Below are positions 1-30,379 of a DNA stretch of 44,031 bases, one piece after another. The notes beneath the pieces were generated by a model. It was not told the origin of the DNA. It saw only the letters and a list, made by a program, of their open reading frames with translations, and did no database searches. The translations under genes and the position numbers were made by a program. The DNA comes from Callorhinchus milii (taxonomy: Eukaryota). The stretch covers positions 124,001 to 168,031 of the forward strand of contig NW_024704842.1 in the NCBI RefSeq assembly GCF_018977255.1. Reading direction: 5' to 3'. Position 1 is the stretch's first letter. Every line of letters begins with the position of its first letter.

Positions 1-282
1 CACCGAAAAATCTGCCGTCACATAATCGTTCCTTGACTACAGGCAGCCACTCAAGTTCGCCGTCAAAAAGATCATGAGTAGGTTAGCGAACACCAGCGCA
101 AATACAATCGGGAAAAAGCGGACAGGGATTGGGATTATTGTAGAGCGCTCCAGTGGGGGAGCGAACACCATCACAGACACCATGGGGAGAGCGCACAATA
201 GGACTGAACAAAGATAACTTTCACAGACTGACAAGCACACGGTTGGGCTGAACGGCATTTTCTGCGAAAGAAAAAAACAGAA

Positions 283-450
283 ATTACTGGAGATGCTGGA
301 TATCAGACAACAAAAACAAAAGTCGTTGGGCACATTCAGCAGTTGAGGCAGCAGATCTAACGAGCGGTCGTGGAAACGAAACGTTGACTCTCTTTCCTTT
401 CTCCTTAGATGTTGCCTGACATGCTGAGTGTTCCCAGAGACTTCTGATAA
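283..450. mobile_element. Imperfect palindromic repeat typical of chondrichthyan genomes (Penelope-LTR-like or MITE-like); copy at ~27345-27510
   Basis: Arm ttgggcacattcagcagttgaggcagcagatcta pairs with the reverse complement of tagatgttgcctgacatgctgagtgttcccag around a central cgaaacgttgact. Confidence 0.55.
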
Positions 451-789
451 TTATTTTCTGAGCAAGGGCCGTTTGTGTTTCTGTTTCTCTTTCGAGGCTT
501 GGGGAAGAAGCGATTTGCTGACCACTCGCAACCTGAGAAATTTATGTTTAACAGACTGAGCAGATTGTGTCTCTCTTTCTGTATGAAGTGTGCTTACTGG
601 CTGTTATTTTTCCTGGTAGCTTCTGTCTCGTTACCCAAAAATAACAACCTGCATTTTGACGACTTGCATTTATACTGCAATAAATCTACTTTAATGAGGG
701 TAAGCATAGAAATGACTTTCTCTCCTCACTGTCCCCTTTCTCCTTTCTCTGCTTTTGCACTCGACCTTCCCGCCTCTCCAAAACCAACA

Positions 790-1440
790 AAAAATTAAGG
801 ATCACTAAGGTGATCGAACGCACGGTCAAAGGGAAGAGTGTTCAGATTTATCTTGAAGGAAGCAAGGAAAGGGTGAGGTAGGTGGACTGCAGAATGTAGT
901 CCTAATGGGTGGGTAGAGATTGGCTAAATGATCGCCCGTAAATGGTGGGGCTGTGAGGTGGGAGACATGAATCAGGCTGGAGTCCGCTGAGCTGAGGGAG
1001 CGGGTAGATTGGTAAGGCGTAGGAGGTCGCAGATGTAGGGGTGTGTGAGGACATGGAGGGCTTTCAATGTGAGTAACATTATCTTGAACTGTATCCAAGG
1101 ATGGGGATGATATGGTCACAGAGACTGGTGGAGGAGATGACACTAGCTGCAGGTTTCTGGGTGATCTGCAGTCGATAGAGGGAGTATTTAGGCAGACGGA
1201 CAAGCAGTGGGTTTGCGCACAGAATCCTGGATCTCATAAAAGAATGTTATAAAAGCATGTATAAGTGTTCCGGCAGCCTGCGGTGTGAGACATTGGTGGA
1301 CACCGTTAATGTTGCGGGAATGGGGGAAGATAGAGCGGGTTATGACACGAGTTTGGGATACATAGGATAGTTGAGGATCAAAAAAGACGCCTTTCACTCC
1401 TCCCTCTTTTCCAACTCTCTGGATGGCACAACTCTCCGAA
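790..1440 (-). mobile_element. Decayed L2-type LINE 3' fragment (copy with ~200-nt deletion at ~27850-28300)
   Basis: PTPYQSTRSLSSADSSLIHV resembles the L2 ORF2 C-terminal Y.P.RSLRS.D..LL.VP motif; ends ccttcaaga..aacac..tttgacc. Confidence 0.55.
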
Positions 1441-1454
1441 TGGGTTGTAATCAT

Positions 1455-1730
1455 AAATAATAATTCTTGCATTTGATATAGCGCTTTTCATGTCTTCGAG
1501 ACATGTCTAATTAGAATTCACCGTATATTTGTGGGCGAAGTGCGGTTGGCAATTGCACATAGCAGTGTCCTACAAACTGTCGGTGATTGAAAATGAGCAA
1601 TACAGCATTGTTTTGTTTAGGAGCGGTTATTATGAGGAGTATAGAGTAGAAATTGCCCAAGGGTTCGCCCTGCCTGGAAAAGGAAAAAAGTGTCTCGCTT
1701 GCAAGGCGATTGCTCTAACCACAGAGCTAC
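1455..1730 (-). mobile_element. tRNA-Ala-derived DeuSINE-like SINE in intron 1 of the left paralogue
   Basis: Head GTAGCTCTGTGGTTAGAGC..CTTGCAA..; body AATTGCCAACCGC; tail GAAAAGCGCTATATCAAATGCAAG-(ATT)n. Confidence 0.7.
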
Positions 1731-1787
1731 AGAACCCCACTTTACGGTACATTCCCACAAATATTCGTGGATTGAAACGGTACTCAC

Positions 1788-1812
1788 CGAAAATAAGAAA
1801 CAATGATTCCAT
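1788..1812 (-). CDS. Exon 1 (leader MESLFLIF) of a paralogous receptor gene that continues beyond the left edge
   Basis: Identical to 28647-28671 including the GTGAGT donor; lies in the duplicated block. Its exon 2 would fall about 50-85 nt left of position 1. Confidence 0.75.
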
Positions 1813-2702
1813 TTCGAGAGTGAGGAGGAGCTCGAGTCAAATACAGAACCTGGAGGATTGTGTTTGTGTCCGACGGGGAAGGATCTCTGCAGACTTAAAT
1901 CACACGGAGTAATTCTCAGGAGAAGCTTTTGACAGTGTCACCCTGCTCTGTGATCACCAAGCATCCACTTCTCTGTAACACTTGCATCGAAAGCTGTTGT
2001 GACACACACACTGAGGAACAGTCTGACACACACACACATACACACACCGAAACAGACACACTGAGCTGCGATAGACACACACACAAACACACACTCAGAG
2101 AGGAACACGAACTGTGACTTACAGATGTATATTTAACGACGTTTAGAGACGGAATCAGAGACTCAGACTCTCTCTCTCCCTTAATCTCTCTCTCTCTCCG
2201 CAGAACGAACAGGATATGTGATGTCCTTTACTGGAATCGTTGCAACACTCGCACACAAACCGCCAGCGTGAAGCTGATTCTCAGAAACTGCAGAACGTTA
2301 TTTAATTGCGGTGAGCAATGCTCCGATTGGGAGCTGTGAGTTGAGCTGGACACCCAGCGCTGAGTATTTTGTGGAATGAAGAAGTAGGTTCTTCCTGGTG
2401 TCACATTGGCCACTTCTCCATTTCTGTGTGCAAAATGCTGCGTGTTTGTGTTCGTCTACAAATACACATCACAACATATTTCATTAATTCCCGTGAAAAA
2501 CTTGGATGGATTCCACGCAGCAATGAATCCTGGAGTCAAATGTAACAGTACATAGACAGGAGAAACCACACATTTACGTTCTCAGTTTAGCCTCTTTGAC
2601 GGATTACCTACTTCCTCATTTCAGTTGCTCACATTTTATCTTTTCTTGCGACATCCTTCTTTCCTTCCCCGCAGTATTTCAAGGCATTGATTGCTGATTA
2701 AT

Positions 2703-3205
2703 GCCCTGCATAGATCAGCGTAGATTTATTGGGTTATTACCAGAGATGAAGGGGATGAGTTTCCAGTGTAGGCTGACCAATTTGGGCCTTTATTCTCTAG
2801 ATATAGATGAATTAGGGGGATCTTATAGAATCCAATAAGATCATCAAAGGGCATGATAGAGTAGATAGTGGGAGATTGTTTCCCCTGATTGGAGAAACTA
2901 AAACCTGGGATCACATCCTTAAAATCAGAGGCCAGCCCTTTCGCACTGAGTTGAGGAAGAACTACTTCACTCAAATGATGGTGAATGTATGGAACTCACT
3001 ACCCCAAAGGGCTGTTGACGCTCAGTCCCGAACATATTCAAGACTGAGATAGATAGATTTCTTACTGCAAAAGAGATTAAGTGATATGGGGATAAGGCGG
3101 GGTCAGGTTATTAGCTGGAGTTAGATTAGAAGATCAGCCATGATTGAATGGCGGGGCAGGCTCGAAGGCCCTAATGGCCTAGTCCTCCTCCTACATGTTA
3201 TGGTA
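2703..3205 (+). mobile_element. CR1-type LINE 3' end (ORF2 C-terminus plus 3'UTR)
   Basis: Translates in the paralogous copy as FPLIGETKT..HILKIRGQPFRTELRKNYFTQMMVNVWNSLPQRAVDAQS.NIFKTEIDRFL; shark-type tail gatcagccatgattgaatggcgg..aatggcct. Confidence 0.85.
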
Positions 3206-5469
3206 TGTCTCCATCCGTCTGTTACTATCACAATATCTGTCACACACACATTGTTTCTCTCAGATTCCCAGTCTCTCTCCATCTGTGAATCTCAAAGCTT
3301 CGTTAACACACAAACTGTGACTCTCACAAACTCTCTGTCACTCACTCTCACAAACCCAAGCCGACTCTCCCTCTACATCTCTCAAACACTCACTCATACT
3401 CCACACTCCCCGTATTGTTCCCTCACAATACCAGTCTGTCTTAAAAACTTTCTCTCTCTCTCTCTCTCTCTCTCTATACATATACAGACCTGATCAATTT
3501 AAGGTGTATTCAAGGGTCAACATTGGATATTTTGTAAATGGCAAAGGATGATGTGTAGCTGAACCACTGTCATGGTGTTCGCTTTGCAACTTTACCGGAT
3601 ATGAAGCACAAACCGCACAGCACCGCCAGGCAAAATGATATCAAACATTTCACTGAAAAAGGAAAAAACAGCTAAACGGAACAACATAATTTCTTTAGCG
3701 GTGTTTTGTATCTGTATTTCTCTGGAGAGTAAACTTGTCTGAAATCTCAAAGCTACCTACTTGCTGGTCCCTACAGTTCTATAATGCACAATATATGCTT
3801 AATTAGAGTTCTCAGCCCTGCTGTCTTGTCAGCTTTTGAGATATTAGAATCAGATAAGGAAGCCAGTCTCCACTCTGCAACACCTCGTTTGACCACTTGC
3901 ACTTCCAATAGTTCTGTCTTTCAAGCTGTAAGTTTAATACAATATAATTCAACTGACATTTCCATAGCGCCCTTCACTTCAGAGGTGCTGCTGTTTGTGA
4001 AAATTAATGTAATTCATGTGAAGTCTGATGGTAACATTGCTCACAACCTCAGTAGCACTCACAAACATTATTATCTTCACACACTCTCTCACACAATCTC
4101 ACACTGTGTAGATCACACTCTCAGTCTCAGTCTCTCTATCTCTATCCGTGTCTCTGAAACTCCGAGTCTCCCTCCAATGTTACTTCCTCAGTACACTCTC
4201 AGCCTCATTCTCCCTATCTCCATCTGTGTGTCTGAAACTCTGAGTCTCCCTCCATCTGTTACTCTCTAAATATCTATCACACACACATTGTGTCTCTCAC
4301 ACTCCCAGTCTCTCTCTGTCTGCGTCTCTCATCTGTCTCTGAAACACACACAATGTGACTCATACTCTGTCTCTCTCTCTCACACGCCATCTCAATATCT
4401 CTCTGTATCTCTCATACTCTCACTCACTCTCCCCATATTTTCCCTCACACTATCAGTCCGTCTTACAAAATGTGTCTATCTGAACCTTTAGCACTCTCTC
4501 TCTATCACCTCAGCCTCTCTCTCTGTCCCCAAACTTAGTCTCCAAGATGAGAGGATAAATTGAGGTTCTATATGTGCAGTGTTGAAGACAAATGTTAAAG
4601 ATCCCGAGGCACTATTTGGAAAAGAGTAAGAAATGTCTCTTTATATTAAATTCCAGCTCAAATTAAACCGTACGAAAATGAGACATGGTATCAAATTGTC
4701 AAAAGCTGATGTGTAGCTGAACCACTGCCATGGTTTAAGCACAGCAACTTTACCGGATATTAAGCACTAATCGTACAATATCTCCCAACAAAGAGGGCTC
4801 AAACATTTAACTGAAAAATGATAAAAAAAATAAACGGAACAGCAGGATTTTTTCGCTGTGTTTTGTATCTGTATTTTTCTGGACAATAAACTCGTCTGAT
4901 ATCTCAAATGTGCCGGCCACTCTCATCCCCACAGCTCCATAATTAACAATATTCGCTTAATTGAGAGTTCTCAGCCCTGCTGTATTGACGGCTTTTGAGA
5001 CCATTACTATCAGATAAGGAACCCAGTCTCCACTCTACAAAACCTCACGTGACCGCTTAGGAAGCCTATATTTCTGTCTTTCCAAGCTGCAAGTTTAATA
5101 CAATATATTACAAATTACATTCGCGTGGCTCCTTCACTTAGGGAGTTCAGCTTTTTGTGCAAATTAATGTAATTCATGTGAAATCTTATGGTCACATTGC
5201 TCACATTCTGTCTCTCTCACACACAATTGTGTATCTCACACTCTGAAACACTGTGCAGCTCACATTGTCAGCCCCTCTATGTCCACACTCTCAATCTCCC
5301 TCCATCTGTTTCGTTCAAATTTACTGACACACACATCTCTCACATTTCGTCTCACAATTTCTTTCTCTACCTCCCAATCTCACTCACTCTCTGTATCTCT
5401 CACACTATCTCTCTCTCTATCTCTTCTTTCACACTACCGTCTCTAGTGTCTCAGAATCAGTTGCTCTCC

Positions 5470-5499
5470 NNNNNNNNNNNNNNNNNNNNNNNNNNNNNN
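5470..5499. other. Assembly gap (30 N)
   Basis: Run of n characters. Confidence 1.
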
Positions 5500-6848
5500 A
5501 GGGAAGTACCTAAAGCACGGTGATTACGCCCGTCCCGTTATACTGCGAGCTTAAGAGTGTACTGCATGTGTTGCTTTGTAAATATAATTTTAAAAATCTT
5601 TGCAATAAATCCACGTGATCGTCGCGCATTAAAATATATTTTTCGAAAAAAATGTCATCACGATTGATAGAGCGACACTGCTGTGCAAAATTGGCTGACA
5701 AGTCTGTCTGATGATCTGTCTGTTTAAGTGTGTACGGAAACTTGTTCAGGCCTCGAGGCCCTGCGGGAATCAGACATGGCTGTTGTCAGACTCAGAGGGA
5801 ACCACAATCACATCACATCAACTTGTGAGCTGAACATTCACATCATTATATGGCACAATAATGGAAGACAACAATTAACGAGTAGCTACAGTTCCAGCTG
5901 CTCTTGATGTACTTCGGTTTACAAAAAACAAATTTATTAATCATGTCTCTGTTGTTTTATTACATTTCATGGAGTCCTTTAGCGGAGACGGAGTAACACT
6001 CGCATCGCCAACGAGAGGACGCTGATTCGATTCCATGGCGGATGAAACCTTAGGCAATGTTCCCCACTACACACACATACCTTGTTTACCGAGCAGTGAA
6101 TAAGAATTCGTTTGTAAATCGATTGGTGGTTCACTTTTCCAGGGGATAATAATCCCATCAAAATAATATTGGTCACTGAATCTATGACGGTTTATGTGGA
6201 TGCCAATCATCCCACGGATCGAATCTAAACAATTATTGATATACTGAGAGAGCGAAATGTGTGTCCTGGTTGGTAGTGATGGTGGCGGTCTTTGAGGTTG
6301 AGTGGCAGAAACCGTGGAAGCATTTAAACGTGGAAAAGGATACACACCATCAAATAAAAACTCTCCGTCCACTTGGCTCCTTCTCAAGACCTTCCTTTAA
6401 AACCGTATCTTCAATCATCATGCATCTTCCATTCACTGTGCACTCCACCCCGATCTTCTCCCAAACTGCAGCTCCAGTGCAGAACACTTACCTGTCCTGA
6501 GACTTTGGACGTTCTCCCGACACGAAAGGCGCAGCGTCATGCAACTTGTTGTTGTAATTGTTGTCTTAGCGACGCTTGATGAAATGCAAGGATTATTATG
6601 ATTCCTCCTCACCAAATTTTATCCAAAAGAGTTATGTAATGATGTCGGGGTTTCACTGAAATCACTGAACATAAAAGTGAGTTTAGTCCACTGTCCATAA
6701 TTGTTAGCCTGACAGCAAGGTCACAGTTTGAGCTTGTCAAGGAAACGCTGCTGTGGGGTCACAGATGTGATGCTGAAACCCGTCACCGTCGACAAACACT
6801 TTCCATCATCAAACTCTGGTGGCAAAAGCTTCTTTGTGAATGGCGACA

Positions 6849-7759
6849 ATGCGACTGTTCATGGATTACCTTATCCTGTTGAGCTTTATGTCAGGTGAGG
6901 CTGTGTGTCACACAATACAGATTTATGTTTATGTAGAGACAGTCTCATCTGGAGGACGGTTCAAGAGGTCTAACATTCTTGGCTTTGTCTCCAGACGCGG
7001 GTTTAAGGGTCAAATTATTCGTAACGGAAATATAATACGAATAATAATCATTGCATTTGGTATAGCACTTTTTGAATCTTCGAGACGTCACGAACCACTG
7101 CATAGAATATACTGGATAGTGCAGTGACTGTGTGTTTAGTGGGCGAAACGGAGAATCCAAATTCACACAGCAGTATCTCCACAAACAGTAGTGGATTGAA
7201 TGATCACACTTTAAGTTAGTCATTATTATCCCGGAAAGGTCATCCTCCAATCGACCAGCAGCTGGGTTCCTAACTACTCCTCGGAAAACAGGTGCGTATG
7301 TATAGATAGGAAACTTCCCAAAGTTTATCCCGGTCCTGCCAGGGAAGGGACCCTTGTCCTATCGATTTCGAGGCGAGTGTACTGTCTCCTGAGCTGCAGG
7401 AGTAATGTAGCGCCATGTTTCAAGTTGATCCTTTCCTCTCGTTGCAGATGTGGTGCTGGGAGATCCAGTCAGACAGCAGACAGCGGGGCTGAGCAAACAA
7501 GAGGGAGACACAGTGATTCTGAGCTGCTCATATATCAACAGTTCGAACTATGTTGCTCTGTATTGGTACAGGCATCACCCCGGCCTCGCTCCCCAATACA
7601 TTCTCTACAGGCATAGTAATGGGATTGACAACACTGCAGATTACGCCAAAGGCCGCTTCGCTTCACATCTTGGCAAGAATCAGTTGCAATCCACATTAAT
7701 CATTCCCAGTGTCATTGTCAATGACGCTGCCACGTAATATTGTGCCTTAACATCAGATG
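6849..7759 (+). pseudogene. T-cell receptor alpha/delta V gene segment with a single premature stop (leader 6849-6894, V exon 7448-7759)
   Basis: 46-nt leader MRLFMDYLILLSFMS-G|GTGAGG; acceptor ttgcag|; V domain DVVLGDPVRQ..VILSC..ALYWYRH..QYILY..GRF..NDAAT*YCALTSD; TAA at 7735-7737 replaces the first Y of YYC; followed by an RSS. Confidence 0.9.
7030..7380 (-). mobile_element. Decayed SINE in the TCR V leader intron
   Basis: Same head, body and (ATT)n tail organisation as the other copies. Confidence 0.6.
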
Positions 7760-7798
7760 CACAGTGCTGCAATGCAATGACTTCCCCGTACACAAACC
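7760..7798 (+). promoter_or_regulatory. V(D)J recombination signal sequence, 23-bp spacer
   Basis: CACAGTG (7760-7766) + 23 nt + ACACAAACC (7790-7798; consensus ACAAAAACC) directly after the V exon. Confidence 0.93.
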
Positions 7799-8444
7799 CA
7801 ATTTACGTTGAGTCACAATGTTACGCCAAACAACTCTGCTTTCATTGTTATACGTGTAAACTAAAACTTCTTATAAAGAAGGTTTCATTCCATTGAAGGC
7901 CTATAGCTTATTTGTAAGACGTTTCGCCCCGCAAGCGACGAGACATTTGTTTGATTCGCCACCGGGCAAAATGTGGCACAGCGCCACACGCCTCTGTTTG
8001 ATTTGCAGTTCGCAGGAACGCGGTTGGTTGTCGATCGGCGGATCGCTTTTCTAGGGGTAATGATCCCTATAAAAAATATTAACAGTAAATTGTTCACTCA
8101 ATCCTGGACTGTGAGAGGGACCTCGATGAGCGCAATTAGCTGCCGCGATTCACGCACAAAACATGCAGTGACGAGATTTTGCAGTGTTTCCTGTGAAACG
8201 ATTTGAAATTACTGGATGACGTGATAAGTCGCTGCATCAAATACAATGATTCTTTTTATTATTTCACTGTGTTATTAACAGACTACACCTCTATCAATAA
8301 ATCACTAAAGAGGAGAGGGAGGGTTTGATCACAGCACAGATGTTAGTCTGACAGCTGACATATTTAACAAGCTCTGACTTTGCTTCTGTGTCTCTCATAG
8401 GAGACACCTGACTAATTGACCACCGGAAGCAAACAATGAAAGAG

Positions 8445-8604
8445 AACAAGAACAACATGGTTCCATTTGTAGAGCGCCTTTCACGTCGGGAGTACCCAGT
8501 GGGGTGGGTGCTAAGGAAGCTTGCCTAAGATTGTGCCATGTCCTGTCCGGGAATCGAACCCGTGTCCTCTCGCTTGCGAGGCGAGCGCTCTGACCACAGA
8601 GCTA
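8445..8604 (-). mobile_element. tRNA-Ala-derived SINE (head 8540-8604 with A and B boxes, internally deleted body)
   Basis: Reverse strand TAGCTCTGTGG...CTCGC-CTCGCAA-GCGAG...GGTTCGATTCC; homologous heads at ~1650-1730, ~7330-7380 and ~28510-28590; SINE tail remnant at ~8445-8495. Confidence 0.7.
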
Positions 8605-8630
8605 AATGATTCCACGCTCTTGTCTTCCAG

Positions 8631-8760
8631 GCCTGATTCAGGGAAACTCTGTGACACAGAAGGTGGCTTCAGTGACTGGGGAAGAAGGAGGAAGTGTGAC
8701 TATGGAATGTCATTATGATACGTGTCTGAGCGGCTACCATTTATATTGGTATCGAGAACA
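8631..8760 (+). pseudogene. 5' fragment of a second TCR alpha/delta V exon
   Basis: tgtcttccag|GC CTG ATT CAG GGA AAC: (G)LIQGNSVTQKVASVTGEEGGSVTMECHYDTCLSGYHLYWYRE, then breaks into poly-C/CA simple repeat. No 3' half, RSS or leader found. Confidence 0.8.
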
Positions 8761-8779
8761 ACGCTTCCCACGTGCATCG

Positions 8780-9463
8780 ACCCAACCCCCCCCCCCCCCC
8801 ACACACACCACACACACTCTCTCTGCCATCTCTCACTCTCTCTGCTCTGTTCCTCCTTGTTTGTTTCACCAACTCTGTCCCTCTCTCTGCCGCTCTCCAT
8901 CATAATCGGTCTCTCAAACATTCGCTCACCTTCACCCTCCGAATTACTCTCTCCTACCCCCGTCTCTCTCCTTGCTTGTCAGCCCTGTTTCTCTCTCTGT
9001 GTGACACTCTCTCTCACTCAATTGCTCTCTCCTTCTCTCGTACTTCAAACGCCCTCTTAGTTCTGAATCGCACATTAACTTTTTTCTAACACAAGCATTC
9101 TTTTCCACTTGCTCTCAGTTGATCTCTCTCACTCCCCCTCTTACCCTCCCGCACTCTTTCTGTCCCCTCTCACACTCTCTCTGCATCACTTTATCTCTGC
9201 TTGCCCCCTTTTTCCCGATCCCCCTAAGATTCTCTCTCTATCAATCTCTCTTTCTCAAACACGCTCATTGTTGAGCCATCCAGTAAATTAAGCACTAATA
9301 TTTCTGATTCCGATTTTCACTCACACCCCTCGTCCTTTGTCTCTCCATCTCTCTCACAACCTGCCCTGCTCTCTTTTACTCTCTCACCCTCTACCACACA
9401 GACTCTCACTCTCGCTATCTTTCTCTTAGTCGCTGATTCTCAATGTGTCCCTCACTCAGTATT

Positions 9464-9496
<33 letters not shown>

Positions 9497-9710
9497 TTCT
9501 CTTTCTCGCAGGCAGTCCCGATGTCTCACTCTATCTCCTTCTCTCACTCAGTTTCCCATTCAGTCTCATTCAATCACTCTCTCACATTCATTCTCACTCA
9601 GTACCTCTCTCAATCTCTCGCTCAGTCTCTCACCCTCAGTCTCATTATATCTTACTCAGTCTCTCTCTCTAACTCATTCACACTCACTCACTCATTCTAT
9701 CTCATTCTGT
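8780..9710. repeat. CT/CA-rich simple-sequence region
   Basis: (CT)n, (CA)n and degenerate CTCA runs. Confidence 0.85.
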
Positions 9711-9837
9711 GACTCAATCTCCACTTATGTCAGCGAGACAAGTGCCGCGAGTGACCCATTGAAGTCAAACTGAAGCTGGTATTGAATATAGTTGCTGATG
9801 AGGAGCTGGAGCGAGGAGATGGCCACCGGCCTCCGGG

Positions 9838-9942
9838 CTACACTCTGACTGTGGCGTAGATTGGACCATCATTCTCACCGTTTTCATGGCCATTCTCAAT
9901 CCTGTTTCCCAACATCAGATTAGCGTAGATGATGTCAGCATT
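9838..9942 (-). CDS. Exon 12, terminal coding exon with ITIM IIYANL and ITIM-like PIYATV
   Basis: ctgtttgcag|AAT GCT GAC ATC ATC TAC GCT AAT CTG...CCA ATC TAC GCC ACA GTC AGA GTG TAG; not visible in the ORF track. Confidence 0.88.
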   Translation of the reverse strand, partial: NADIIYANLMLGNRIENGHENGENDGPIYATVRV

Positions 9943-11615
9943 CTGCAAACAGGGCAACACTCAATATATCTGCAGAAGGTCATTGGGAGTAAACCCTCCC
10001 CCACCCACCCCTCCCTGGAGACTCCGACTCATGTCTCCAGTGTGTGAGGTTGTTTGTTTCCCCTTCCCCACACCAGGAGTACTACACATGTTAAATTATC
10101 AGCAAGTGGAATCAAGTTTGTGATAAATCCCCCCGTAAATAAACCGGAGCCAACAATAATGACAATAATCTTGCGTTTAAGAAACTCCTCTGAGGTGAAC
10201 GACGCTGTTTGAACGTAAAATTAAACACAGACACACACAGACATCGAGAGTCTCTTTCTGACTCACACATACGTATACACACACACAAACACACACACAG
10301 TCACTTCCAAAAAGGCAGAAACATGCGCTCACAGAAAAACACAATCACGTAGACAGATACACAAGCACATGGTTCTGAAACTTTTCACGTTGAGAGAACG
10401 GCTGAAAGTGTTTAACAACATGTATTATAATTGGTGGAAAGTTTATGACCATAACCAAAAGGATCAGCTAAAATCAGTGAAAAATTGTTAACGGCCAGTG
10501 CAAGGGGAGATTCTCTCTTGCTTTTCTCAATATTGCCAAATTCCCGACTTTGAGGATAAAACCATGAATTTATAGCTCAAGCGCGAGTGCTTCCGGCTGA
10601 GACAGCGTGACCGATAGCCTGAGCTGGGTTGTGCCAGGCTGACACGGCTGAGCTGGGTTGACACAGTGCTGAGCTGGGCTGAGCCAGGTCTGACCTGGTC
10701 TGACACACGGCCAAAGCTGGTCTGTTGACACAGGGCGTGAGCTGGGCTGTACAGAAACTGAGCTGACACAGGGCTTAGCTGGGCTTACACAGAGTTGAGG
10801 TGAGCTGAAACAGAGCCTGAAGGTAGGCTGACACCTGGTGCAGCTGAACCGATACAGGGCCTGAGCAAGGCTGACACAGTGTTAAGCTGCCCTGACACAG
10901 GCCAGTGATGCATTCACTACTCACCATTGGAGGCACCGACCGGGGAACCTTTCTCACCGTAGCATCTGAAACAAACGGAAACTCTATTTAGCACAATTCA
11001 TTAACCGCACTATAGTTGAACAGTATTATTAAGGATATCAAAGGTTGCAGTAAATAATTATTAACGATAATGCTGATAGTAAATATTAGACCACAGTTAA
11101 TATTTTGATTAACATGGCATTTGAAAAAAACTAACTTATCACGACATCGTGAAGTCCCAAAGAGCTTCACAGGATTGACGGTGTAATGGAGTTACTGCGT
11201 ATACTGTCAATTAAACCTGGAAGACATTCATGCCAGCAGCCTCACAAGTACAAGTATGTGAACGATTTTTTCTCAGGATTGATGGCCAGATGGAGATCGT
11301 TGGCAGAGTGAGAGAGGTTCTCTTCTTGAACAGCGCCGAGGGATCTTTAATATCCTCCTAAACAGGCCCAAGTTTCCTCGGTTTATCTTAAAATCTGAAG
11401 GACGAAACTTGAAGTGGCTCAAAACAGTCAGCGACATAGAAAAAAACATGCAGACACACAAACACGCAACAGTAACACAACCTGGCACGCAGAGCGACCA
11501 AGAGAGTAGGAGAGTGGCAGACACACAGATTGGCACACACAATAGACACAGACTGACTAAGGGAGAAGGTGAGTGGAGACAAAGAGACACACAGAACAAA
11601 CGATAACGGGAGAGT

Positions 11616-11651
<36 letters not shown>

Positions 11652-14600
11652 ATGTATGAGTATTATTAAGGACTTAAAATCTTGCAATTAATAATCTTTA
11701 ATGATCATGCAAGCATTGGTGTCAGCAGCTCCAAAATCAGATGTACACTGGGCGTGAACAATTGTTTTCTGGAGGATTGTTGGACAGAGAGAGACTGTTG
11801 GCTATGAGAGACAAATTCTCTCTTTGAATTGGGCCGCGGGTTCTTCAAAGTCCACGAAAAAGGGCAGAAGGGACGTCGGTATATCGTCTCTTCTGAAAGA
11901 AAAAAAACTTGAAGTGGCTCAACTTGAGACAAGCGATTGACAGTCAGACACACAGACAATCATGCGGCAGACACACAGACAGAAACGCAGACAGACCAAG
12001 AGAGAAGGAGAGGGGCAGACATACAGATTGACACACTGTAAGACACCCAGAGAGATGAAGGAAGAAGGCGACTGCACAAGGGGAGAGACAGATCCAGAGA
12101 AAGAGAACAAGGAATCAATAGACTCTGGTTTGGGGGAAGCTCATGAGCAAGAGATTGGTTTTGTGTGGGGCTCGGGCCATCGGCTGACCAGACGAGGTTG
12201 TGATCAGCTCTTTTCACTCAGGACTCAAACCTAGGAAACTTCTCACTCACAGGTGACGTTGCTGGGTTCAGGGCCGCCTCCCGTGGGTACGTTCCTGCGA
12301 AAAAAACAGACAGATGAGAGCGAAATATTCTCTGCTGTTTTACTGAGGAGGATTGCGGTGCTCAGTCCAAGTCTTGTAACAGGGCTAACGACCAAACATT
12401 GACACTCAGCTGGAGTGAAGCGAGGGGGTGGGGAAGGTTTGTGTTGGGAGCCAGTTGTCTGAGGCTTGTGTGGAAACCCGTCACCATGGTGACGAGTATC
12501 CATACCATACGATGAATTCCAGTCATGCCTCCAATAGAAGGCAATTCCTTTTTATTTAATTAATATGCATTACATCTGCCAACCTAATCCCCATGTGGTT
12601 TAGGCACAATATGGCTAGAATCAGGGTTTAGCGACCTCACAGTATGAATTGGGATCCCACCAGCTAAAACCACACGGCTTGCTATAGGGAGCTCCGTCTT
12701 GCAATCTTCCTCTGCTTTTCGAGTTAGGAAATCTCTACCCGTTAGGGATTTATCCTGTAGTGTAGCAGGAGCTGAATAGGAGGATTCCTTACCCCCAATA
12801 TATTTTCTGCCCTCCAAGTGTTGCAAATGAGTGTGGGAGTGTACACATGTACAGACAGTTTGGAGAGAGAGCAGGGAATGGGATTAAATTGGAGATTTCC
12901 AGTGGGGTGCAAGCAACACCACAGACAGGATGGCGTGAGAGGAGGAATGGGAAGAGTATAGAGAGCTCCAGTCGGGGTGGAAGCACCTGTGCAAGCAGGA
13001 TGGGGAAATAGAATGAAATAGCGGTGAAATGTTCTCACCTTTCCCCACTTGAACTCTTCTGTTTACCTGTAATTGCAAAGGGTAACGCATGTCAAATATT
13101 GATTAGTACTGGTTGTGTATTTTTGTGGTTATATTAACAATAATCCTCCCTTTCATAGATTATTACCGTTTCATTACAAAGGGCAGTCCCTACCCAAACC
13201 CTTTCCCATCACTACCACCATCCATGGACATGCCTTCAGCCACTTCGCTACGCTATTTGTAAATACATCCCAGTTTCCATCTGATTTAGCTCTCGCTCCC
13301 ACCCTCACACCACAAGACCCATCACTTCAACCGGGTCTAGTATTTTTATTACTATTCTGTGTAATAAACACTGGCCTCAAATTGCAGTGACTCTGCTTTT
13401 TTAATGAAATGCTGCAGCCCATTGCACACAAGTGGGTAACAAAAGCGGACATGAAGTGACTGATCCATTTTATTTTGGGGATTGTTGGCCAGGATTCTCC
13501 CTTCTCTTTTCGAATGCTGCTGCAGGAACTGTAATGTCCACATGATCAGGAAAACAGGACCACGTTACAACTTTCTCACTGTGGGTACAGGCTGAAGAAC
13601 TTGGGAACAAAGTCTTGGAAACAAGAGTAGGGTACTGCACTGGATATTGACAGTAATTATCTCAATCCAAAAGTATCATTGTCGACAGCCTTTAAACATC
13701 GATATTATCAAGTACTCAAAGTTAAGGATAAAACTCATTGCCAATTTCGCTAACATAAACAACGACATGTCTTTCTAACTCAGATCCATGGTGCTGTCTA
13801 ATCTGTCCCAACAATAAATGACTTGATAAAGACTGAATGACTGTTTGGTAGCTTTGTTGTCAGGTCCCCATCTGCACTCATTGACACGCAGAATATCAAT
13901 ACAAAGTCGTTGTATACTTTCCTGTCTCCTTCTTTTGACCCACAAATATACATTAAATTCACATGACAGCATATTCTGTGAAGCGCTTTGGGACTTCGAG
14001 AAGACGGGAAAAGCGATATATCAAATGCAAGGTTTATTAATATTATTATTTATTCCCAATAACTTTAAGCCATATTCACTGATATTATTGGCCACTTACC
14101 TTTCTTATATTCACTGATTCCCAGTAGTAACACAATTATCATTAACGAAGCGACAATCCCCGCAGCCAGTCCTGTAATGTGCTTCCAGGTCCAATTTGCT
14201 GGAGAGGGAAATGACCAGAGTAATTTGTCGACTTTGAAGAGCTAATATGCTGGGAAAACCCTTTATTTTAAAGGCATCGCTGAGATCTTATCTCCTGCTA
14301 ATTTCAAAGCGCAAAAGAAGGAAATGTTTTCTCTTTTGCAATGAAAATTGCCGAATTTCCCCTCGTCTGTCTTCAAGAGAAAACTTCTCGACCCCTGATC
14401 CTGGGAAGGTTGAGCTAAATAGGGTCTCTTCTGGTGCTGCGCAAGTGAATAGCCAAGCTGCGGAAGATTGGAATCGAGGCCACACTTCATGGTGTTCCCC
14501 ATTCTTCTCCATGAGCCAGGCATGTCCCAGTATTCCAGGGAACTGCTGATAACAAAACAGTCCGGCCTGTCTCATCGTCATCAGGTTGAGGAGCAGATCG

Positions 14601-17600
14601 GACACTGGGAGCCGGATTATTTCTACGTTGGCTTTAAAAGTACAAGTCAGCGTGAGCATCTTGTTGGTATGTTGTGGGGCAAGAAGGGATAGTCTACACG
14701 ATTATGGTCAATGTGTGAGGTAGTGGTGTAAGTAACAGCTGTAATGCAAGAGCAAGATCTGGGTCCGCCCAACCTTGTCGCACTCCAAAACACACCGCGG
14801 AATGACGGAGATCAGTTCAGCAGCGATGCTTTCCGCTGTTTGCAGGAGAGAGGGTTTACACCCCAGATACGCTGTATAGGGATGGGTCGGGAATTTGGGT
14901 TTGGAAACTGTTTTATCGCGTGGATGGTTGCAGCCTGGATCAAGCAATCCAACTGAGAGCGGGAGATAACGTGGAAATATGATCGATGATATAAAGAGTT
15001 ACTGGAACAGAAGGTACTGTAAAAGATCAGAAGACAAGTAGATTTTTGTGTGAGATTATACCCAAACCTTACCGCGCACAGTGATTCCCATTCGATCGCT
15101 CGCTATTGATGTAAACACTCGTCCGTCTATTTGTGTAGTATATTTGCACGTGTAGTTTGCTGCACTGATCTCCGATAGGATGAATGTTACCGTGTTGTTA
15201 TTCTCTGGAGCTGGTTGTGATATGATAAACGCATCATCTCTGTAGAGAGAGAAATTGCTGCCAGGATAATTCCCAGAACATGAGATCTCAGCGCTTTCCC
15301 CTCTCACAAACACCCGGGAATCTGGCTTCAGCGAAATTTTGGCTTTCTGGAGCGGATCTGGAATAAAAACACAGTAAAGATCATCTCACAAACATTCGCT
15401 CTGTGAATAGAAACGTTTCAGGTTATAGCATAAAGGACCATTTGCTTCTTCCCATCCTGGTGAAGGTGTCTGGACGAAGTGAAGGTTTTGAGGGGCAGTT
15501 TCAGGGCAAACTCCAGCAGTCGTTTCTTTAGACAGAGGAAGGGTGCACAGCGGCTGACAGCGGAGTGGCCACGGAGGGCAGTGAGGCCGGGCAACTAACT
15601 AACAGCTTCAGCATGAGACGGCCGAACGGTAATTTAATCTGAACAGCACGTGTGATTTTCAGCAGTGTTTTAAACAACAGCGTAGGGTGTCAACCAACGG
15701 ATCAAACTTAATTCTGGAGCATCGACTTCACACAGAGGGAAATGGGATTGTGGAACTCGCTAACTGAAGCTATGATTCGATCAGATAGTCCAGATACATT
15801 CCAGACCTAATCACACCTTCATTTGAGTGAGAGGGACATATAGGATTTTGAGGCAGTGGGAGTGTGTGAGGCAATGAGCGACAGAGGAATAGGACGTTTT
15901 GGAGGGTGTTAGGAATTTGGAAGCAGAAATAGACGGTGTGGGATTAATAGAGTTTGTGAAAGGCAATGGGGTTGCGGTAGGTTATCAAGGTTTGTGAGGG
16001 AGGGTGGAAAATTGGTTGAGGGAGGCAGTGAATGTGAGGAAGGATGCGTGCTGTTGGAAGTGAGGGATTCAGTTTGATGGAGGAAGGGAGCAATGCAGAT
16101 AATCTGGTGTAAAAAAGCTAGTAAAATAAGATATTTATTTGGGGAGGAGAATTTTCCAGGGCTGCAGCGAGAGAGTTTGGGAGTGGGATTTAATCGGCTA
16201 GCTACTTCAGATTATCTGGCAAAGGAAAGATTGACAAATTTGCCTCCTTCTGTGCTGTATGATTCCATGATTAAATAAAATAAAGTGAGGATGGGGCGAA
16301 GGCGTGATATGATCGCAGTGACTGGACACTTGGGGCAATGAATACCACTGATGAGAGAGTTCAAGATCTCGCTCTTCCACTGATGAGAGAGTTCAAGATC
16401 TCGCTCTTAACCCACTGATGAGAGAGTTCAAGATCTCGCTCTTACCCCACAAAGAAATTCCCACTCGTTTGCTCTCTGGTGATGTGAGCTCGCGTGCGTC
16501 TTTATGTTTAGCATATTTACACGAATAATTCCCTGCACTGATCTCCGATGGGGCGAATGTTGCCGTGTTGTTTTTCTCATGAGTCGACTGTGATGACATC
16601 AACTTCCCTTCTCTGTATAAAGAGAAATTACTGCCTGGATAATTTCCAGAACATGAGATCTAAGCGCTTTACCCTCTCACAAACACCCGTGAATCTGGCT
16701 TCAGGGAAATGGTGGGTTTCTGGAGCGGTTCATGAATTAAAGTAAATATAATCTCACAAACACACACTTCGTGACATGAAAACAGTTCAGTTCAGACGAA
16801 CACTGTCTATTTTCTTATTTCTCAGCCTGAAGGATTCATCGTGAAGACTGGGAGAGGCAAGGGTTAAGGGACAGATTAAGGACAGGCCCGAGCATATGCT
16901 TCTTTAAACCTAGGGAGGGGACAACGGCTGGCACAGGGGTGGCCATGGAGGGCAGTGAGGCCGTGGCCTGATATTCCACAAAGCTATAGCCAGGGACCTG
17001 TGACAGGGAATACAGACAGAAACTCTCAACTGACCTTCAGACGTATTTAAATAACAGGATACGATCACATCCAGGGGACCAAACAGTAAATGTAGGAGCA
17101 ACGACTTCACACAGTAAAGTGAGATGGTGGGAATCATTGACTGAAGCGGGATTGGAATAAGACAGTATAAACACATTCAAGATGTCGCAAGACTTTCATA
17201 GGAGGGAGAGGAGATAAAAGATGTGGGAGGGAGTGAGGCTGTGGGAGAGAGTCAGTGTTTCGGAAAAATAGAGTGTGGGGATGGAAGCAATAGAATGTAC
17301 GTGCGGATGAGGAATAGAAGTAATGAAAGGTTGGGGAATAGGAAGTGTGAAATGAATTACGGGGGAAAGTGAGGAATTGAAGTAGACTTGTGTCATTGAG
17401 CATTTGGTACATGTGTTAGGATGGGTGGGCGGCGGGATGGGGGACAGTGGTAGTTGGAGGGCAGATCTGTGATCAAGGCTAATGTAATGCAAGTGGCAGC
17501 GAACGGCCATTTAACAGATTCGTGAGAGAAACGCAAACTGGTTATTATGTAAAATCATACCCAGATCTTACCCCACAAATAGATTCCCACTCGTTCGCTC

Positions 17601-20600
17601 TCTGGGGATGTGAACTCTCGACCGTCTATATGTGTAGTATATTTACACGTGTAATTTCCTGCACTGAAATCCGACAGGGTGAAATTTGACGTGTGGATGT
17701 TTTCCTGAGTTGTCCGTGATATGAGAAACTTGCCGTCTATGTATAAAGAGAATATGCTGCCTGGATAATTCCCAGAACATGAGATCTGAGCGCTTTCCCC
17801 TCCCACAAAGAACGGGGAATCTGTCTTCAGGGAAATGATGGCTTTCTGAAGTGGATCTGAAATTAAAACACAGTAAAGGTAATCTCACAAACACTCACTC
17901 TGATCTGATCTGTGACAGTGAACATCAGTGTCGACAATAAGCCCAGCCTCACCCTCTGAGACTGTTTCTCTCTGAGGTTTAATACGAGGCAGAAATGTGG
18001 GTGGTTCCAACTACGTGTCTTGATTTGACGCTGCAATTCTTCCGTATTGAAACACTTTTTGATGTTTGGGTATGTCTTTCTGTGAGCGAAGAGTCAGTGT
18101 TAGCTCGGAGTCAGTGTGAGCTCTGGATCAGTGTGAGCTCGCGATCAGTGTGAGCTCGGGGTCAGTGTGAGCTCGGGGTCAGTGTGAGCTCGGGGACACT
18201 GTAAGCTGGAGTTGCTTATAGCCTTGACTGCCTGTTCAGGTAGTGGTAACAAATCTCATGACGATATTCAATAACCGAAGGGATTCTTTTTCTGTTGCCA
18301 TTGCCAACAATCCCCAAATTAAATTTGATTGGCCCTACACTCCACCCATATCAATGGCACGTTGTTGCAGTTGTGGTCTATACCTGAACAGAATATGCCA
18401 CCGTCCTGCCCGTGTCCGCAGTCAGGCCGACCAACCACAGGCCCCGATCCTTCTCCAAAGCGAGCGTTACTTGAGACTGATACAGCAAATCCACATCCCA
18501 AATAGTTACAAATATATCCTGCCATCTCCATGTTCAGCGTCTCGCCACAAACTGTTCTCCAAGTGTCATAGTAGTACAGCTCAACTCTCCCCACACACCG
18601 GCTGTCTCCATTCACCAGTTTGGGTGGGTTACCTCCTGCCAAGTACATACAATACAATATCCACAGCAACAACTTCAAGCGTATGTGCAATTAACACAAT
18701 CTGTACCCTCACAAACAGCGGACGTTTGACCCTGGGTTAGCAGAGATGGTGAGACACACGTATAGCAGAGGAGGTGGGAACCTGGGATAGTAGATGCTGT
18801 GTGACAATGGGTTAGCCGAGGATGTGTCACATTGGGTTAGGAGGGAATCTGTGACACTGGGTGAGCCTGAGAATACATTGGAATATACAGCAGAGAAACA
18901 TTCGGCCCAACTGGTCTATGACGTTAATCACTCCCTGATTTCACTTTTCTGTTTTTTCTCCCCGCCCTGTGAATACCTCGAGTTTTAATAGCACCTCACT
19001 TGTGCTCAATCCCCTGCGCTCTCTCCCTTTGCTGATCCCCCTTTGGCTCAACACACTTGTACTCAACAACCTCGTGCTCTTACACAACTTGCTCTTACCC
19101 ACCTGTCCTCAACCCCACTGTGCCTACCGTTCCTGTTTACACACTCTCTGCTCACCCTCCTGTGAAAACCGCCCCGTAAACATCCCTTTGATTACCCCGC
19201 CCCCCGCCCATGGGTGATAACTTCCCTACTCCACAATATGCGGAATCTCACCTGCTCATTCACAATTTACCCACTATGGCCAGTACACTTACTCATATGC
19301 TCAACTCCCACGCCCCACACCCACCCCACCCTGTGCCACTCCTGGTTCTGCCCCCTGTCTTCTGCCCCAGTGTTCACCAATGCGCTCAACCCATGCTCAA
19401 ATTTACTTTCTCAAACCGCTGTGATCACTACCAATGCATCCCGCTCCCCGGTGCTCTGCATGTACCCCAGTGCTCATACCCTGTGCTCAGCCCCAGTATA
19501 CTCACCTCCCTCTCTACTCATCGCCTGTACTCACTTTTCTTCCGCTGCTCTCTCCCTCTGTTCACCCTGCAATACTCTCCCCCTCCCCTGTTCTTACACA
19601 GCCTGTGCTCTGTCTTCTTGTTTTGAGGCCCCTGTGCACACACCCACCGTTTCTTATCCCACACGTGCTCACTCCACTGCTGTGCACTGCGTTCTTGTTC
19701 TGAACCCCTGTTGTACTCACCCCCNGTCTGCTCAACCCCTGGTTCTCACCGCCTTGTGACCCTCGTGTGCTTTCGACTCTGTGCATTTCCATCTTGTGTT
19801 GATCCTCCTGCTTTCCACCATATGCTTCCCACCCATATGACCACTCCGTCATTTAACTCTCCTATACTTCCCTCTGCCCTATGATTACCTCACGTGTATT
19901 CACCACCCGACTTGTGCTCATTCCACTATGCTCTCCGCCTTTGCTTGCCTTCCCTTTTTCTCTTCCCACTTTTACTTAATCCTCCCCTTGGGCTCTTAAC
20001 TTCTGCACTCTTACCACCGCCTGTGCTCAACGCCACTATGACTGCATCCCCTATTTAGAAAGACAACGCTCACAATCCCTCTGCGTTACGCCAGACCGGG
20101 CGCTGCTCCCCGCTTGTTGCCACCCACCTGTGCTCGCCATTCGTGCTCTTCATCCAGGATTCACCTCCAAGCGCTTCCCCTCTGCTCAACCCATCCTTTT
20201 GCTCGCCATTGTGCTGAATCCCCCTTTTCTTATCCACACTGTGCTCCTCTTACCCTGTACAGTTAACTCACTTTGCAGTCTATTGTGTGAAGCGTTTTGG
20301 GATATCCTTCCAAGAGCATTATAAAATGCAAGGATTATTATTATTACTCATCCCTCCTGTGCTCACACCCACCCATGTGCATTAACTCTGTGATACGCCC
20401 AATGTGCTTAACCCCTGATCTTCCCGATAAGCTCACCAACACATATGCATTCCCCGGTTACCACCCCTTGTTCTCCACAAATTGTTTGAAACAGCTCACT
20501 CACTGCCTCAAATTCCCCTGCTCATCGCACTCATGCACACCCAATCGCCCCGGGCTCTCCCTGCATGTCTACTCATCTCTCTGTGCTCTGCCCCACTGTA

Positions 20601-28671: not shown

Positions 28672-29565
28672 TTCGAGAGTGAGGAGGAGCTCGAGTCAAA
28701 TACAGAACCTGGAGGATTGTGTTTGTGTCCGACGGGGAAGGATCTCTACAGACTTAAATCACACGGAGTAATTCTCAGGAGAAGCTTTTGACAGTGTCAC
28801 CCTGCTCTGTGATCACCAAGCATCCACTTCTCTGTAACACTTGCATCGAAAGCTGTTGTGACACACACACTGAGGAACAGTCTGACACACACACACATAC
28901 ACACACCGAAACAGACACACTGAGCTGCGATAGACACACACACACAAACACACACTCAGAGAGGAACACGAACTGTGACTTACAGATGTATATTTAACGA
29001 CGTTTAGAGACGGAATCAGAGACTCAGAAACTCTCTCTCCCTTAATCTCTCTCTCTCTCTCCGCAGAACGAACAGGATATGTGATGTCCTTTACTGGAAT
29101 CGTTACAACACTCGCACACAAACCGCAAGCGTGAAGCTGATTCTCAGAAACTGCAGAACGTTATTTAAGTGCGGTGAGCAATGCTCCGATTGGGAGCTGT
29201 GAGTTGAGCTGGACACCCAGCGCTGAGTATTTTGTGGAATGAAGAAGTAGGTTCTTCCTGGTGTCACATTGGCCACTTCTCCATTTCTGTGTGCAAAATT
29301 CTGCGTGTTTGTGTTCGTCTACAAATACACATCACAACATATTTCATTAATTCCCGTGAAAAACTTGGACGGATTCCACGCAGCAATGAATCCTGGAGTC
29401 AAATGTAACAGTACATAGACAGGAGAAATCACACATTTACGTTCTCAGTTTAGCCTCTTTGACGGATTACCTACTTCCTCATTTCAGTTGCTCACATTTT
29501 ATCTTTTCTTGCGACATCCTTCTTTCCTTCCCCGCAGTATTTCAAGGCATTGATTGCTGATTAAT

Positions 29566-30070: not shown

Positions 30071-30306
30071 ATGTCTCCATCCGTCTGTTACTATCACAAT
30101 ATCTGTCACACACACATTGTTTCTCTCAGATTCCCAGTCTCTCTCCATCTGTGAATCTCAAAGCTTCGTTAACACACAAACTGTGACTCTCACAAACTCT
30201 CTGTCACTCACTCTCACAAACCCAAGCCGACTCTCCCTCTACATCTCTCAAACACTCACTCATACTCCCCATATTGTTCCCTCACAATACCAGTCTGTCT
30301 TAAAAA

Positions 30307-30343
<37 letters not shown>

Positions 30344-30379
30344 CATATACAGACCTGATCAATTTAAGGTGTATTCAAG

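What the first reader, a model, noticed from the sequence alone, without database searches (positions are those of the whole stretch)
6849..9942. TCR alpha/delta V segments embedded in an innate ITIM-receptor cluster
Seen: a V segment with a 23-RSS ends ~2.0 kb, and a V fragment ~1.1 kb, from the receptor stop codon, in convergent orientation, with no assembly gap between them. No D, J or C segment is visible in the following 36 kb. Established: SRCR receptors WC1/SCART are gamma-delta T-cell co-receptors, and ancestral linkage of antigen-receptor and LRC/NK-type genes has been proposed (primordial immune complex idea). Inference: either the receptor cluster is interleaved with the TCR alpha/delta V array, or these are orphon V genes carried by the cluster's duplications.
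Basis: partly seen in the sequence, partly recalled or inferred. Interest (0 to 1): 0.85.

Follow-up and report, generated by a model that had tools for sequence, protein, structure and literature searches.

The report
TCR V segments between shark-relative receptor genes
Between two tandem copies of an elephant-shark inhibitory immune-receptor gene lie one complete and one broken T-cell-receptor alpha/delta-type V gene segment; they are real and were copied along with the receptor genes, but nothing yet shows that the block belongs to the working T-cell-receptor locus.

Summary
V1 is a complete germline V gene: leader 6840-6894, intron, V exon 7448-7759 and a canonical 23-bp RSS at 7760-7798, the only RSS in the window. 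V2 (8632-8762) is a 131-nt 5' relic with no leader found, no FR3 and no RSS. Both lie on the + strand, 2.0 and 1.1 kb from the stop codon (9838-9840) of a minus-strand SRCR-Ig-ITIM receptor gene, with no N between.

New here:
- V1 carries an in-frame TAA at 7735-7737 in this assembly. All five other read sets that cover the site read TAC (Tyr), and one contig is otherwise identical over 227 nt.
- Named relatives of V1 are almost all TCR alpha/delta V genes.
- A Callorhinchus milii paralogue (P0273) is 94% identical, has an intact YYC motif and shares V1's 3' flank. So the V travelled with the 90-95% identical receptor duplication.
- There is no J, C or further V in the window.

The interleaving is local and young. 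Whether the block lies in the functional TCR alpha/delta locus or is an orphon block is unresolved. The WC1/SCART and "primordial complex" reading has no support. This scan had already noted the same receptor-plus-V repeat on adjacent DNA.

The parts
6840..6894 (+). V1 leader exon (MATMRLFMDYLILLSFMS, phase-1 GT donor at 6895)
   Evidence: the homologous leader region is read in another frame at the end of C. milii model P0054
6895..7447 (+). V1 leader intron (553 nt), enlarged by repeat insertions (multi-copy depth at 7051-7167; SINE-like stretch at 7308-7395)
7448..7759 (+). V1 V exon, family A, TCR alpha/delta type
   Evidence: Pfam V-set E 6.8e-9; 83% to P0001 and 94% to P0273 of C. milii; named relatives are TRAV/TRDV
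7735..7737 (+). In-frame TAA replacing the first Tyr of YYC; reads TAC in five other read sets
   Evidence: 7737 A>C at full depth in X1, X2 and X3, X4, X25; the X4 contig 7627-7853 differs from the window only at this base
7760..7798 (+). V1 recombination signal: heptamer CACAGTG (7760-7766), 23-nt spacer, nonamer ACACAAACC (7790-7798)
   Evidence: the only RSS found on either strand of the window
7799..8203 (+). 3' flank of V1, shared with the paralogous V gene behind P0273; contains an interspersed repeat at 8058-8263
   Evidence: 89% and 78% translated identity; repeat copies at 24234, 26451, 41039 and many in L001
8445..8605 (-). tRNA-derived SINE ending 27 nt upstream of the V2 exon
   Evidence: Rfam tRNA 41.4 bits at 8546-8605, minus strand; word depth about 1e5
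8632..8762 (+). V2: 5' relic of a family-B V exon (FR1-CDR1-FR2); no leader exon found, no FR3, no RSS
   Evidence: V-set E 1.2e-4; 65-79% to C. milii P0131/P0133/P0134/P0139/P0157/P0188; paralogue contigs diverge after 8762
8763..9720 (.). CT-rich low-complexity tract that cuts off V2 and separates it from the receptor; not bridged by public short contigs
9838..9942 (-). Last coding exon of the SRCR-Ig-ITIM receptor (NADIIYANL...PIYATVRV, stop at 9838-9840)
9838..28671 (-). Receptor gene body. The upper bound is taken from an earlier scan note. SRCR exons at 25610-25996, 21603-22034 and 18319-18690. Ig exons at 17555-17806 and 15056-15313. An Ig pseudo-exon at 16441-16686 has two in-frame stops.
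   Evidence: note s1-139563
1..5442 (.). Duplicated block, 90-95% identical to 27066-33386 (the 5' end and upstream region of successive receptor genes); ends at the N run 5470-5499

Best explanation
Shown:
- The window comes from the elephant shark (Callorhinchus milii) or a very close relative.
- In the 4.4-kb spacer between two tandem, minus-strand SRCR-Ig-ITIM receptor genes lies a roughly 3-kb island of V-array DNA on the + strand. It is bounded on both sides by CT-rich low-complexity tracts.
- The island holds V1, a structurally complete germline TCR alpha/delta-type V gene segment of one family. Its canonical 23-RSS is intact. Its only defect is a nonsense codon that is private to this assembly or individual.
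- It also holds V2, a dead 5' relic of a second alpha/delta-type family.
- The island was copied together with the receptor gene by recent segmental duplication. A paralogue with 94% identity, an intact YYC motif and the same 3' flank exists elsewhere in the genome.

Inferred:
- The block is part of the sprawling, poorly assembled alpha/delta V region of this species. There V segments are interspersed with unrelated, fast-duplicating gene families, much as trypsinogen genes sit inside the TCR beta locus.
- In individuals with the TAC allele, V1 can be joined by RAG under the 12/23 rule to a distant 12-RSS (J-alpha or D-delta).
- Such a join would delete or invert whatever receptor genes lie between.
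- The neighbourhood reflects duplication history, not a functional or ancestral coupling.
For: - Species: best hits are C. milii proteins, and the related V-array locus comes from GCA_018977255.1.
- V1 anatomy and the single RSS.
- V typing: 11 of the 12 informative names among 120 profile hits are TRAV/TRDV/TCR alpha-delta V. The top Swiss-Prot fold match is human TRDV3 at 32% identity. A family-B V in a dense five-V array (L001) also has a 23-RSS.
- The stop is not fixed: 7737 reads C in X1, X2, X3, X4 and X25 and never A. The X4 contig is identical to the window over 227 nt except at that base.
- Co-duplication: blocks 1-5442 and 27066-33386 are 90-95% identical. P0273 is 94% identical in V and 89% in the flank.
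- Family members sit next to other V families elsewhere.
- Precedents: TCR alpha/delta-type V exons are scattered between IgH clusters in elasmobranchs (PMC12227049). Trypsinogen genes lie inside TRB (PMC2685407).
Against: - There is no D, J, C or further V in 44 kb, and the flanking scaffold is out of reach.
- An earlier scan note calls the scaffold unplaced.
- No read depth on V1 in the two RNA-type runs laid (X5, X6).
- No V-J-C protein carrying a family-A V in the protein database.
- V2 is dead, and V1 is null in the reference.
- The coding part of V1 is only slightly better conserved against P0273 than its non-coding flank (94% against 89%), so selection since the duplication is not shown.
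- The next inter-receptor spacer has no V in its first 10.6 kb.
Confidence: 0.5

Rival explanations
1. Orphon block. A piece of V array was captured next to an SRCR-Ig-ITIM gene outside the TCR alpha/delta locus and amplified with it. The V segments never rearrange and are decaying.
For: - V2 is a relic without leader, FR3 or RSS.
- V1 carries a nonsense codon in the reference.
- There is no V1 depth in RNA-type runs X5 and X6 and no family-A V-J-C protein.
- No J or C lies within 44 kb.
- V conservation against the paralogue is hardly above that of the flank.
Against: - V1's open reading frame is intact in five other read sets, and its RSS, splice sites and leader are all canonical.
- The paralogue P0273 keeps the YYC motif, the CAC of the heptamer and the nonamer.
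- Working V arrays also hold many pseudogenes.
- Bona fide dense V arrays of this assembly also sit on small separate contigs (L001), so being unplaced says little.
Confidence: 0.33
2. Assembly artefact. The V island and the receptor's 3' end were joined wrongly through the CT-rich low-complexity tract at 8.76-9.72 kb.
For: - Public short contigs break repeatedly inside this tract and none spans it.
- Similar low-complexity tracts recur across the window.
- An N run sits at the other edge of the island, 5470-5499.
Against: - There is no N in 6849-9942.
- A contig from run X6 covers 8628-8790 without a difference, crossing the V2 break point, though with only 28 nt beyond it.
- A paralogous V with the same flank exists.
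- Earlier notes on adjacent DNA report the same receptor-plus-V pairing three times. One mis-join would not produce that.
Confidence: 0.07
3. Ancient or functional linkage. The SRCR-Ig receptor is a co-receptor-like partner kept next to TCR V genes since early gnathostomes (the primordial immune complex idea).
For: - SRCR-family genes of another type are also reported among V segments on other pieces of this genome (scan notes).
- Ig-TCR linkage in cartilaginous fish is published (PMC3964593, PMC12227049).
Against: - The duplicated units are 90-95% identical, so they are young.
- The receptor's architecture (three group-B SRCR domains, Ig domains, an ITIM tail) is not that of WC1/SCART.
- A literature search found no paper describing such linkage.
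- The one other-species locus examined (Narcine, L002) was a non-rearranging multi-V receptor and gave no information.
Confidence: 0.05

Closest known systems
Germline TRAV/TRDV gene segments of jawed vertebrates
   Same: Split leader with a phase-1 intron; V-set domain with Cys23, WYR, the GRF-x-S-x-L-x-K FR3 motif and YYCAL; a 23-bp-spacer RSS directly 3'; best named relatives are TRAV/TRDV.
   Different: There is no D, J or C in reach. Locus membership and use in rearrangement are not shown. The reference copy carries a nonsense codon, and the neighbours are innate-type receptor genes.
Trypsinogen gene family interleaved in the TCR beta locus (human, mouse, cattle; PMC2685407)
   Same: An unrelated multigene family sits between TCR V segments and duplicates within the locus.
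   Different: The trypsinogen arrangement is anciently conserved and its position in the locus is proven. Here the partner is an immune receptor family, the duplication is recent, and the position is unknown.
TCR alpha/delta-type V exons scattered among IgH clusters in elasmobranchs (PMC12227049)
   Same: Alpha/delta-type V exons in cartilaginous fish lie between other gene clusters, away from a compact V array.
   Different: That case concerns antigen-receptor clusters on a mapped chromosome. This one concerns a non-rearranging SRCR-Ig-ITIM family in a holocephalan on an unmapped piece.
Ig/TCR orphon V genes
   Same: V segments duplicated together with flanking DNA; one is truncated and one is null in the reference.
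   Different: By definition orphons lie outside the main locus, which is not established here. V1 keeps a perfect RSS, and its reading frame is intact in other individuals.

Membership tests
TCR alpha/delta V gene segment (TRAV/TRDV) | Leader exon, short intron and V exon encoding a V-set Ig domain with conserved Cys23, Trp41 and Cys104 | tested here: met
   V1. In this assembly a TAA replaces the Tyr two codons before Cys104; other read sets have TAC. V2 keeps only FR1-CDR1-FR2.
TCR alpha/delta V gene segment (TRAV/TRDV) | RSS with a 23-bp spacer immediately 3' of the V exon | tested here: met
   CACAGTG, 23 nt, ACACAAACC at 7760-7798. V2 has none.
TCR alpha/delta V gene segment (TRAV/TRDV) | Sequence groups with TRAV/TRDV rather than TRBV, TRGV, IGHV or IGLV | tested here: inconclusive
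   Eleven of the 12 informative names among 120 profile hits are TCR alpha/delta V; the twelfth is an automatic kappa name. The top Swiss-Prot fold hit is TRDV3, but IGHV, IGLV and TRGV score almost the same. The PDB fold and sequence searches are swamped by nanobodies and scFvs. No tree with TRB, TRG or Ig outgroups could be built.
TCR alpha/delta V gene segment (TRAV/TRDV) | Lies in the TRA/TRD locus, in cis with D-delta, J and C | not testable with these tools
   No J, C or other RSS in the window. The flanking scaffold could not be fetched.
TCR alpha/delta V gene segment (TRAV/TRDV) | Found rearranged to J-C in T-cell transcripts | tested here: inconclusive
   No depth on V1 in RNA-type runs X5 and X6. 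No family-A V-J-C protein in the database. The tissues are unknown and only contigs were available, so absence is weak evidence.
Orphon V gene | Located outside the main antigen-receptor locus | not testable with these tools
Scaffold position unknown.
WC1/SCART gamma-delta T-cell co-receptors (for the neighbouring receptor) | Ectodomain made only of tandem group-B SRCR domains, with no Ig domains, and an activating-type tyrosine tail | tested here: not met
   Three SRCR exons followed by Ig-like exons, and a tail with an ITIM (IIYANL). The SRCR domains match CD163, CD5L, CD6 and DMBT1 generically.

The most novel reading that the evidence does not exclude
The SRCR-Ig-ITIM family is a resident, co-amplifying component of the holocephalan TCR alpha/delta V region. 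V-to-(D)J joining would then delete or invert inhibitory-receptor genes in a way that depends on which V is used, tying a T cell's V choice to its dosage of these receptor genes.
Probability: 0.1. Interest if true: 0.7.

Novelty: new member of a known kind. Interest (0 to 1): 0.35.

Why it matters
If the block does lie inside the working TCR alpha/delta locus, the elephant shark would give a second clear case, after trypsinogen genes in TRB, of an unrelated multigene family growing together with TCR V segments. This time the family would be an inhibitory immune receptor whose copies are removed or flipped by V(D)J joining. If the block is an orphon, it is an ordinary by-product of segmental duplication.

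The practical gain here is for annotation. V1 should not be written off as a pseudogene, because its only defect is a single base that reads as Tyr in every other data set examined.

Tried and rejected
- Typing V1 by fold. Foldseek against Swiss-Prot put TRDV3 first, but IGHV, IGLV and TRGV were almost equal. Foldseek against PDB returned only nanobodies and Fabs. phmmer against PDB was dominated by multi-domain scFvs. The ESM Atlas gave mixed TRB and TRA/TRD names. None of these discriminates.
- A conserved regulatory block behind V1, a lead from scan note s1-139367. The multi-copy stretch at 8011-8263 proved to be an interspersed repeat found in both orientations elsewhere in the window and in L001, so it is not V-specific evidence.
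- Fetching the genomic context of the paralogues. P0001 and P0273 are not on record.
- Synteny in another cartilaginous fish. The Narcine locus L002 is a non-rearranging multi-V (pIgR-like) gene with no RSS and no SRCR, so it gave no information.
- Looking for family-A V-J-C chains by a region search with a longer query. It found only germline-type C. milii models, but it did reveal P0273.
- Bridging 8.8-9.8 kb with public contigs. The tiles break at microsatellites.
- Looking for the V island after the second copy of the duplicated block (33.4-44 kb). Only a transposable element is shared.
Full report
**Observation**

Direct reading of 6000-10500, the ORF list and a script scan confirm a complete germline V gene on the + strand.
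- The leader exon is 6840-6894 (MATMRLFMDYLILLSFMS, GT donor, phase 1).
- The intron is 553 nt.
- The V exon is 7448-7759 and encodes DVVLGDPVRQQTAGLSKQEGDTVILSCSY...WYRHHPGLAPQYILY...KGRFASHLGKNQ...DAAT*YCALTSD.
- CACAGTG (7760-7766), a 23-nt spacer and ACACAAACC (7790-7798) follow directly.

With a perfect heptamer and at most two nonamer mismatches allowed, this is the only RSS on either strand of the 44-kb window. Pfam V-set matches V1 at E 6.8e-9.

The second V (Pfam V-set E 1.2e-4) starts at a splice acceptor at 8632 and encodes only FR1-CDR1-FR2.

The minus strand carries the receptor.
- SRCR exons lie at 25.9, 21.9 and 18.6 kb.
- Ig-like exons lie at 17.7 and 15.2 kb.
- The last exon, 9942-9838, ends NADIIYANLMLGNRIENGHENGENDGPIYATVRV-stop.

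The only N runs are at 5470-5499 and 19725.

**V1: pseudogene or not**

The frame contains a TAA at 7735-7737 where V genes have the first Tyr of YYC. I laid public contigs of the same species on the region.

All five runs that cover position 7737 read C, giving TAC (Tyr), at full depth. They are X1 and X2 and X3, X4 and X25. None reads A. The X4 contig spanning 7627-7853 differs from the window at this one base only, so it is the same locus and not a paralogue. All family members in the protein database also have Tyr there.

The stop is therefore a derived change, either private to the assembled individual or a consensus error. Elsewhere in the population V1 is an intact, RSS-bearing V segment. 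Logan contigs drop minor variants, so the A allele may still exist in those samples.

**V2**

Its nearest relatives are eight C. milii V models at 65-79% identity. Their consensus continues WYREQQETQPQYVL...KRFSAELQ...SDSAVYYCAL.

In X1, X2 and X4, multi-copy contigs follow the window up to 8762. They then continue with letters that encode exactly QETQPQYVL. The window instead runs into poly-C/CA and about 950 nt of CT-rich low-complexity DNA.

A tRNA-derived SINE (Rfam tRNA, 8546-8605, minus strand; word depth about 1e5) ends 27 nt upstream of the exon. No leader exon was found. V2 is a dead relic.

**What kind of V**

A profile of V1 and its C. milii relatives was searched against 5.8 billion proteins and returned 156 hits. 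Among the 120 listed, 12 carry informative names. Eleven are TCR alpha, delta or alpha/delta V genes from turtle, frog, teleosts and others. One is an automatic kappa-type name.

Other points agree with this typing:
- The FR3 motif (KGRF-x-S-x-L-x-K ... YYCAL) is the classical TRAV/TRDV pattern (my own knowledge).
- The 23-bp spacer and the lack of a J-C within a few kb argue against a cartilaginous-fish Ig mini-cluster.
- A family-B V with a 23-RSS sits in a dense array of five V genes within 12 kb, with no SRCR or Ig exons, on a separate 62.6-kb contig of GCA_018977255.1 (L001).

Fold-level typing did not discriminate. TRDV3 was the top Swiss-Prot hit at 32% identity, but IGHV, IGLV and TRGV were nearly equal, and PDB hits were nanobodies. 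I rate alpha/delta type as likely but not proven by a tree with outgroups.

**Relation to the receptor cluster**

Window 1-5442 is 90-95% identical to 27066-33386. These are the 5' ends and upstream regions of two successive receptor genes, so the period is about 27 kb.

A region search found P0273, a C. milii gene model that reads through its RSS.
- It is 94% identical to V1 over the V domain and has an intact ATYYCAL.
- Its read-through translation is 89% identical to the non-coding 3' flank of V1 at 7973-8203.
- Its read-through shows the same RSS length, a CAC-initial heptamer and the same nonamer.

This divergence matches that of the duplicated blocks. The V and its flank were therefore copied in the same wave of segmental duplication as the receptor genes.

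The pairing is not universal, though. The 10.6 kb after the second copy of the block (33.4-44 kb) shares only a transposable element with the V spacer and has no V.

The V island (about 5.7-8.76 kb) is bounded on both sides by CT-rich low-complexity tracts. Models P0131 and P0054 show that DNA like 5689-5877, and DNA like the V1 leader region, follow other V families elsewhere in the genome. The island therefore looks like a captured slice of a mixed V array.

**What is missing**

There is no J-like FGXG motif and no further RSS. Outside the receptor there is no Ig-type domain.

There is no depth on V1 in the two RNA-type runs laid, and no family-A V-J-C protein in the database. Both are weak negatives.

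The low-complexity link at 8.76-9.72 kb is tiled but not bridged by short contigs. One X6 contig (8628-8790, no differences) crosses the V2 break point by 28 nt.

**Interpretation**

The local interleaving of TCR alpha/delta-type V segments with SRCR-Ig-ITIM genes is real and young. I favour the reading that the block is part of a sprawling, fragmentarily assembled alpha/delta V region (0.5). The alternatives are an orphon block (0.33), a mis-join (0.07) and ancient functional linkage (0.05).

Published precedents exist for unrelated gene families, or scattered V exons, inside antigen-receptor regions:
- trypsinogen genes in TRB (PMC2685407);
- alpha/delta-type V exons between IgH clusters in elasmobranchs (PMC12227049);
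- Ig-TCR linkage in C. milii (PMC3964593).

I found no paper describing SRCR-Ig-ITIM genes in such a setting.

The receptor is not of WC1/SCART architecture, so the co-receptor analogy is only a loose lead.

**Earlier scan notes**

Notes s1-139386, s1-139357 and s1-139382 had already reported the same receptor-plus-V repeat on the adjacent 62 kb. They also concluded that locus membership is unproven. My results agree with them. They add the TAA/TAC polymorphism, the exact V2 break point and the P0273 co-duplication evidence.

Noticed in passing
window 16441-16686 (-): A third Ig-like exon of the receptor, 62-64% identical to the two intact Ig exons, carries two in-frame stop codons (VRG*SA*ISCSG). 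It is probably a skipped pseudo-exon, so this receptor copy may have two rather than three Ig domains.
   Followed up: partly
window 8628-8790 and 8800-9740: Contigs from RNA-type runs X5 and X6 cover the V2 relic and the CT-rich tract. One X6 contig covers 8628-8790 with no differences. This could be the receptor's long 3' UTR read antisense through V2, or DNA carry-over and repeat cross-mapping.
   Followed up: no
window 5470-5499: The 30-N run sits exactly where the 90-95% duplicated block (1-5442) ends and the V island begins. The left boundary of the island therefore cannot be read.
   Followed up: no
window 5689-5877 and 6827-6895: The C-terminal read-through of C. milii model P0131 (a family-B V) matches 5689-5877 at 62%. 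That of P0054 (a third V family) matches the V1 leader region in another frame at 78%. The same flanking DNA therefore follows other V families elsewhere, as expected for a slice of a mixed V array.
   Followed up: partly
window 8058-8263; also 24234-24441, 26451-26650, 41039-41244: An interspersed repeat of about 200 bp is present in both orientations in the window and at more than ten places in V-array locus L001.
   Followed up: partly
window 36950-37267: A 47-bp minisatellite of 6.8 copies at 84% match. The 38-44 kb stretch beyond it is strongly C-rich and G-poor with A in excess of T (GC skew down to -0.68), and most of it could not be classified.
   Followed up: no
L002 (Narcine bancroftii CM072946.1, 250.9 Mb): A gene model annotated as polymeric-immunoglobulin-receptor-like consists of repeated V-set exons without RSS. 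It is a non-rearranging multi-V receptor, not a TCR V array.
   Followed up: partly
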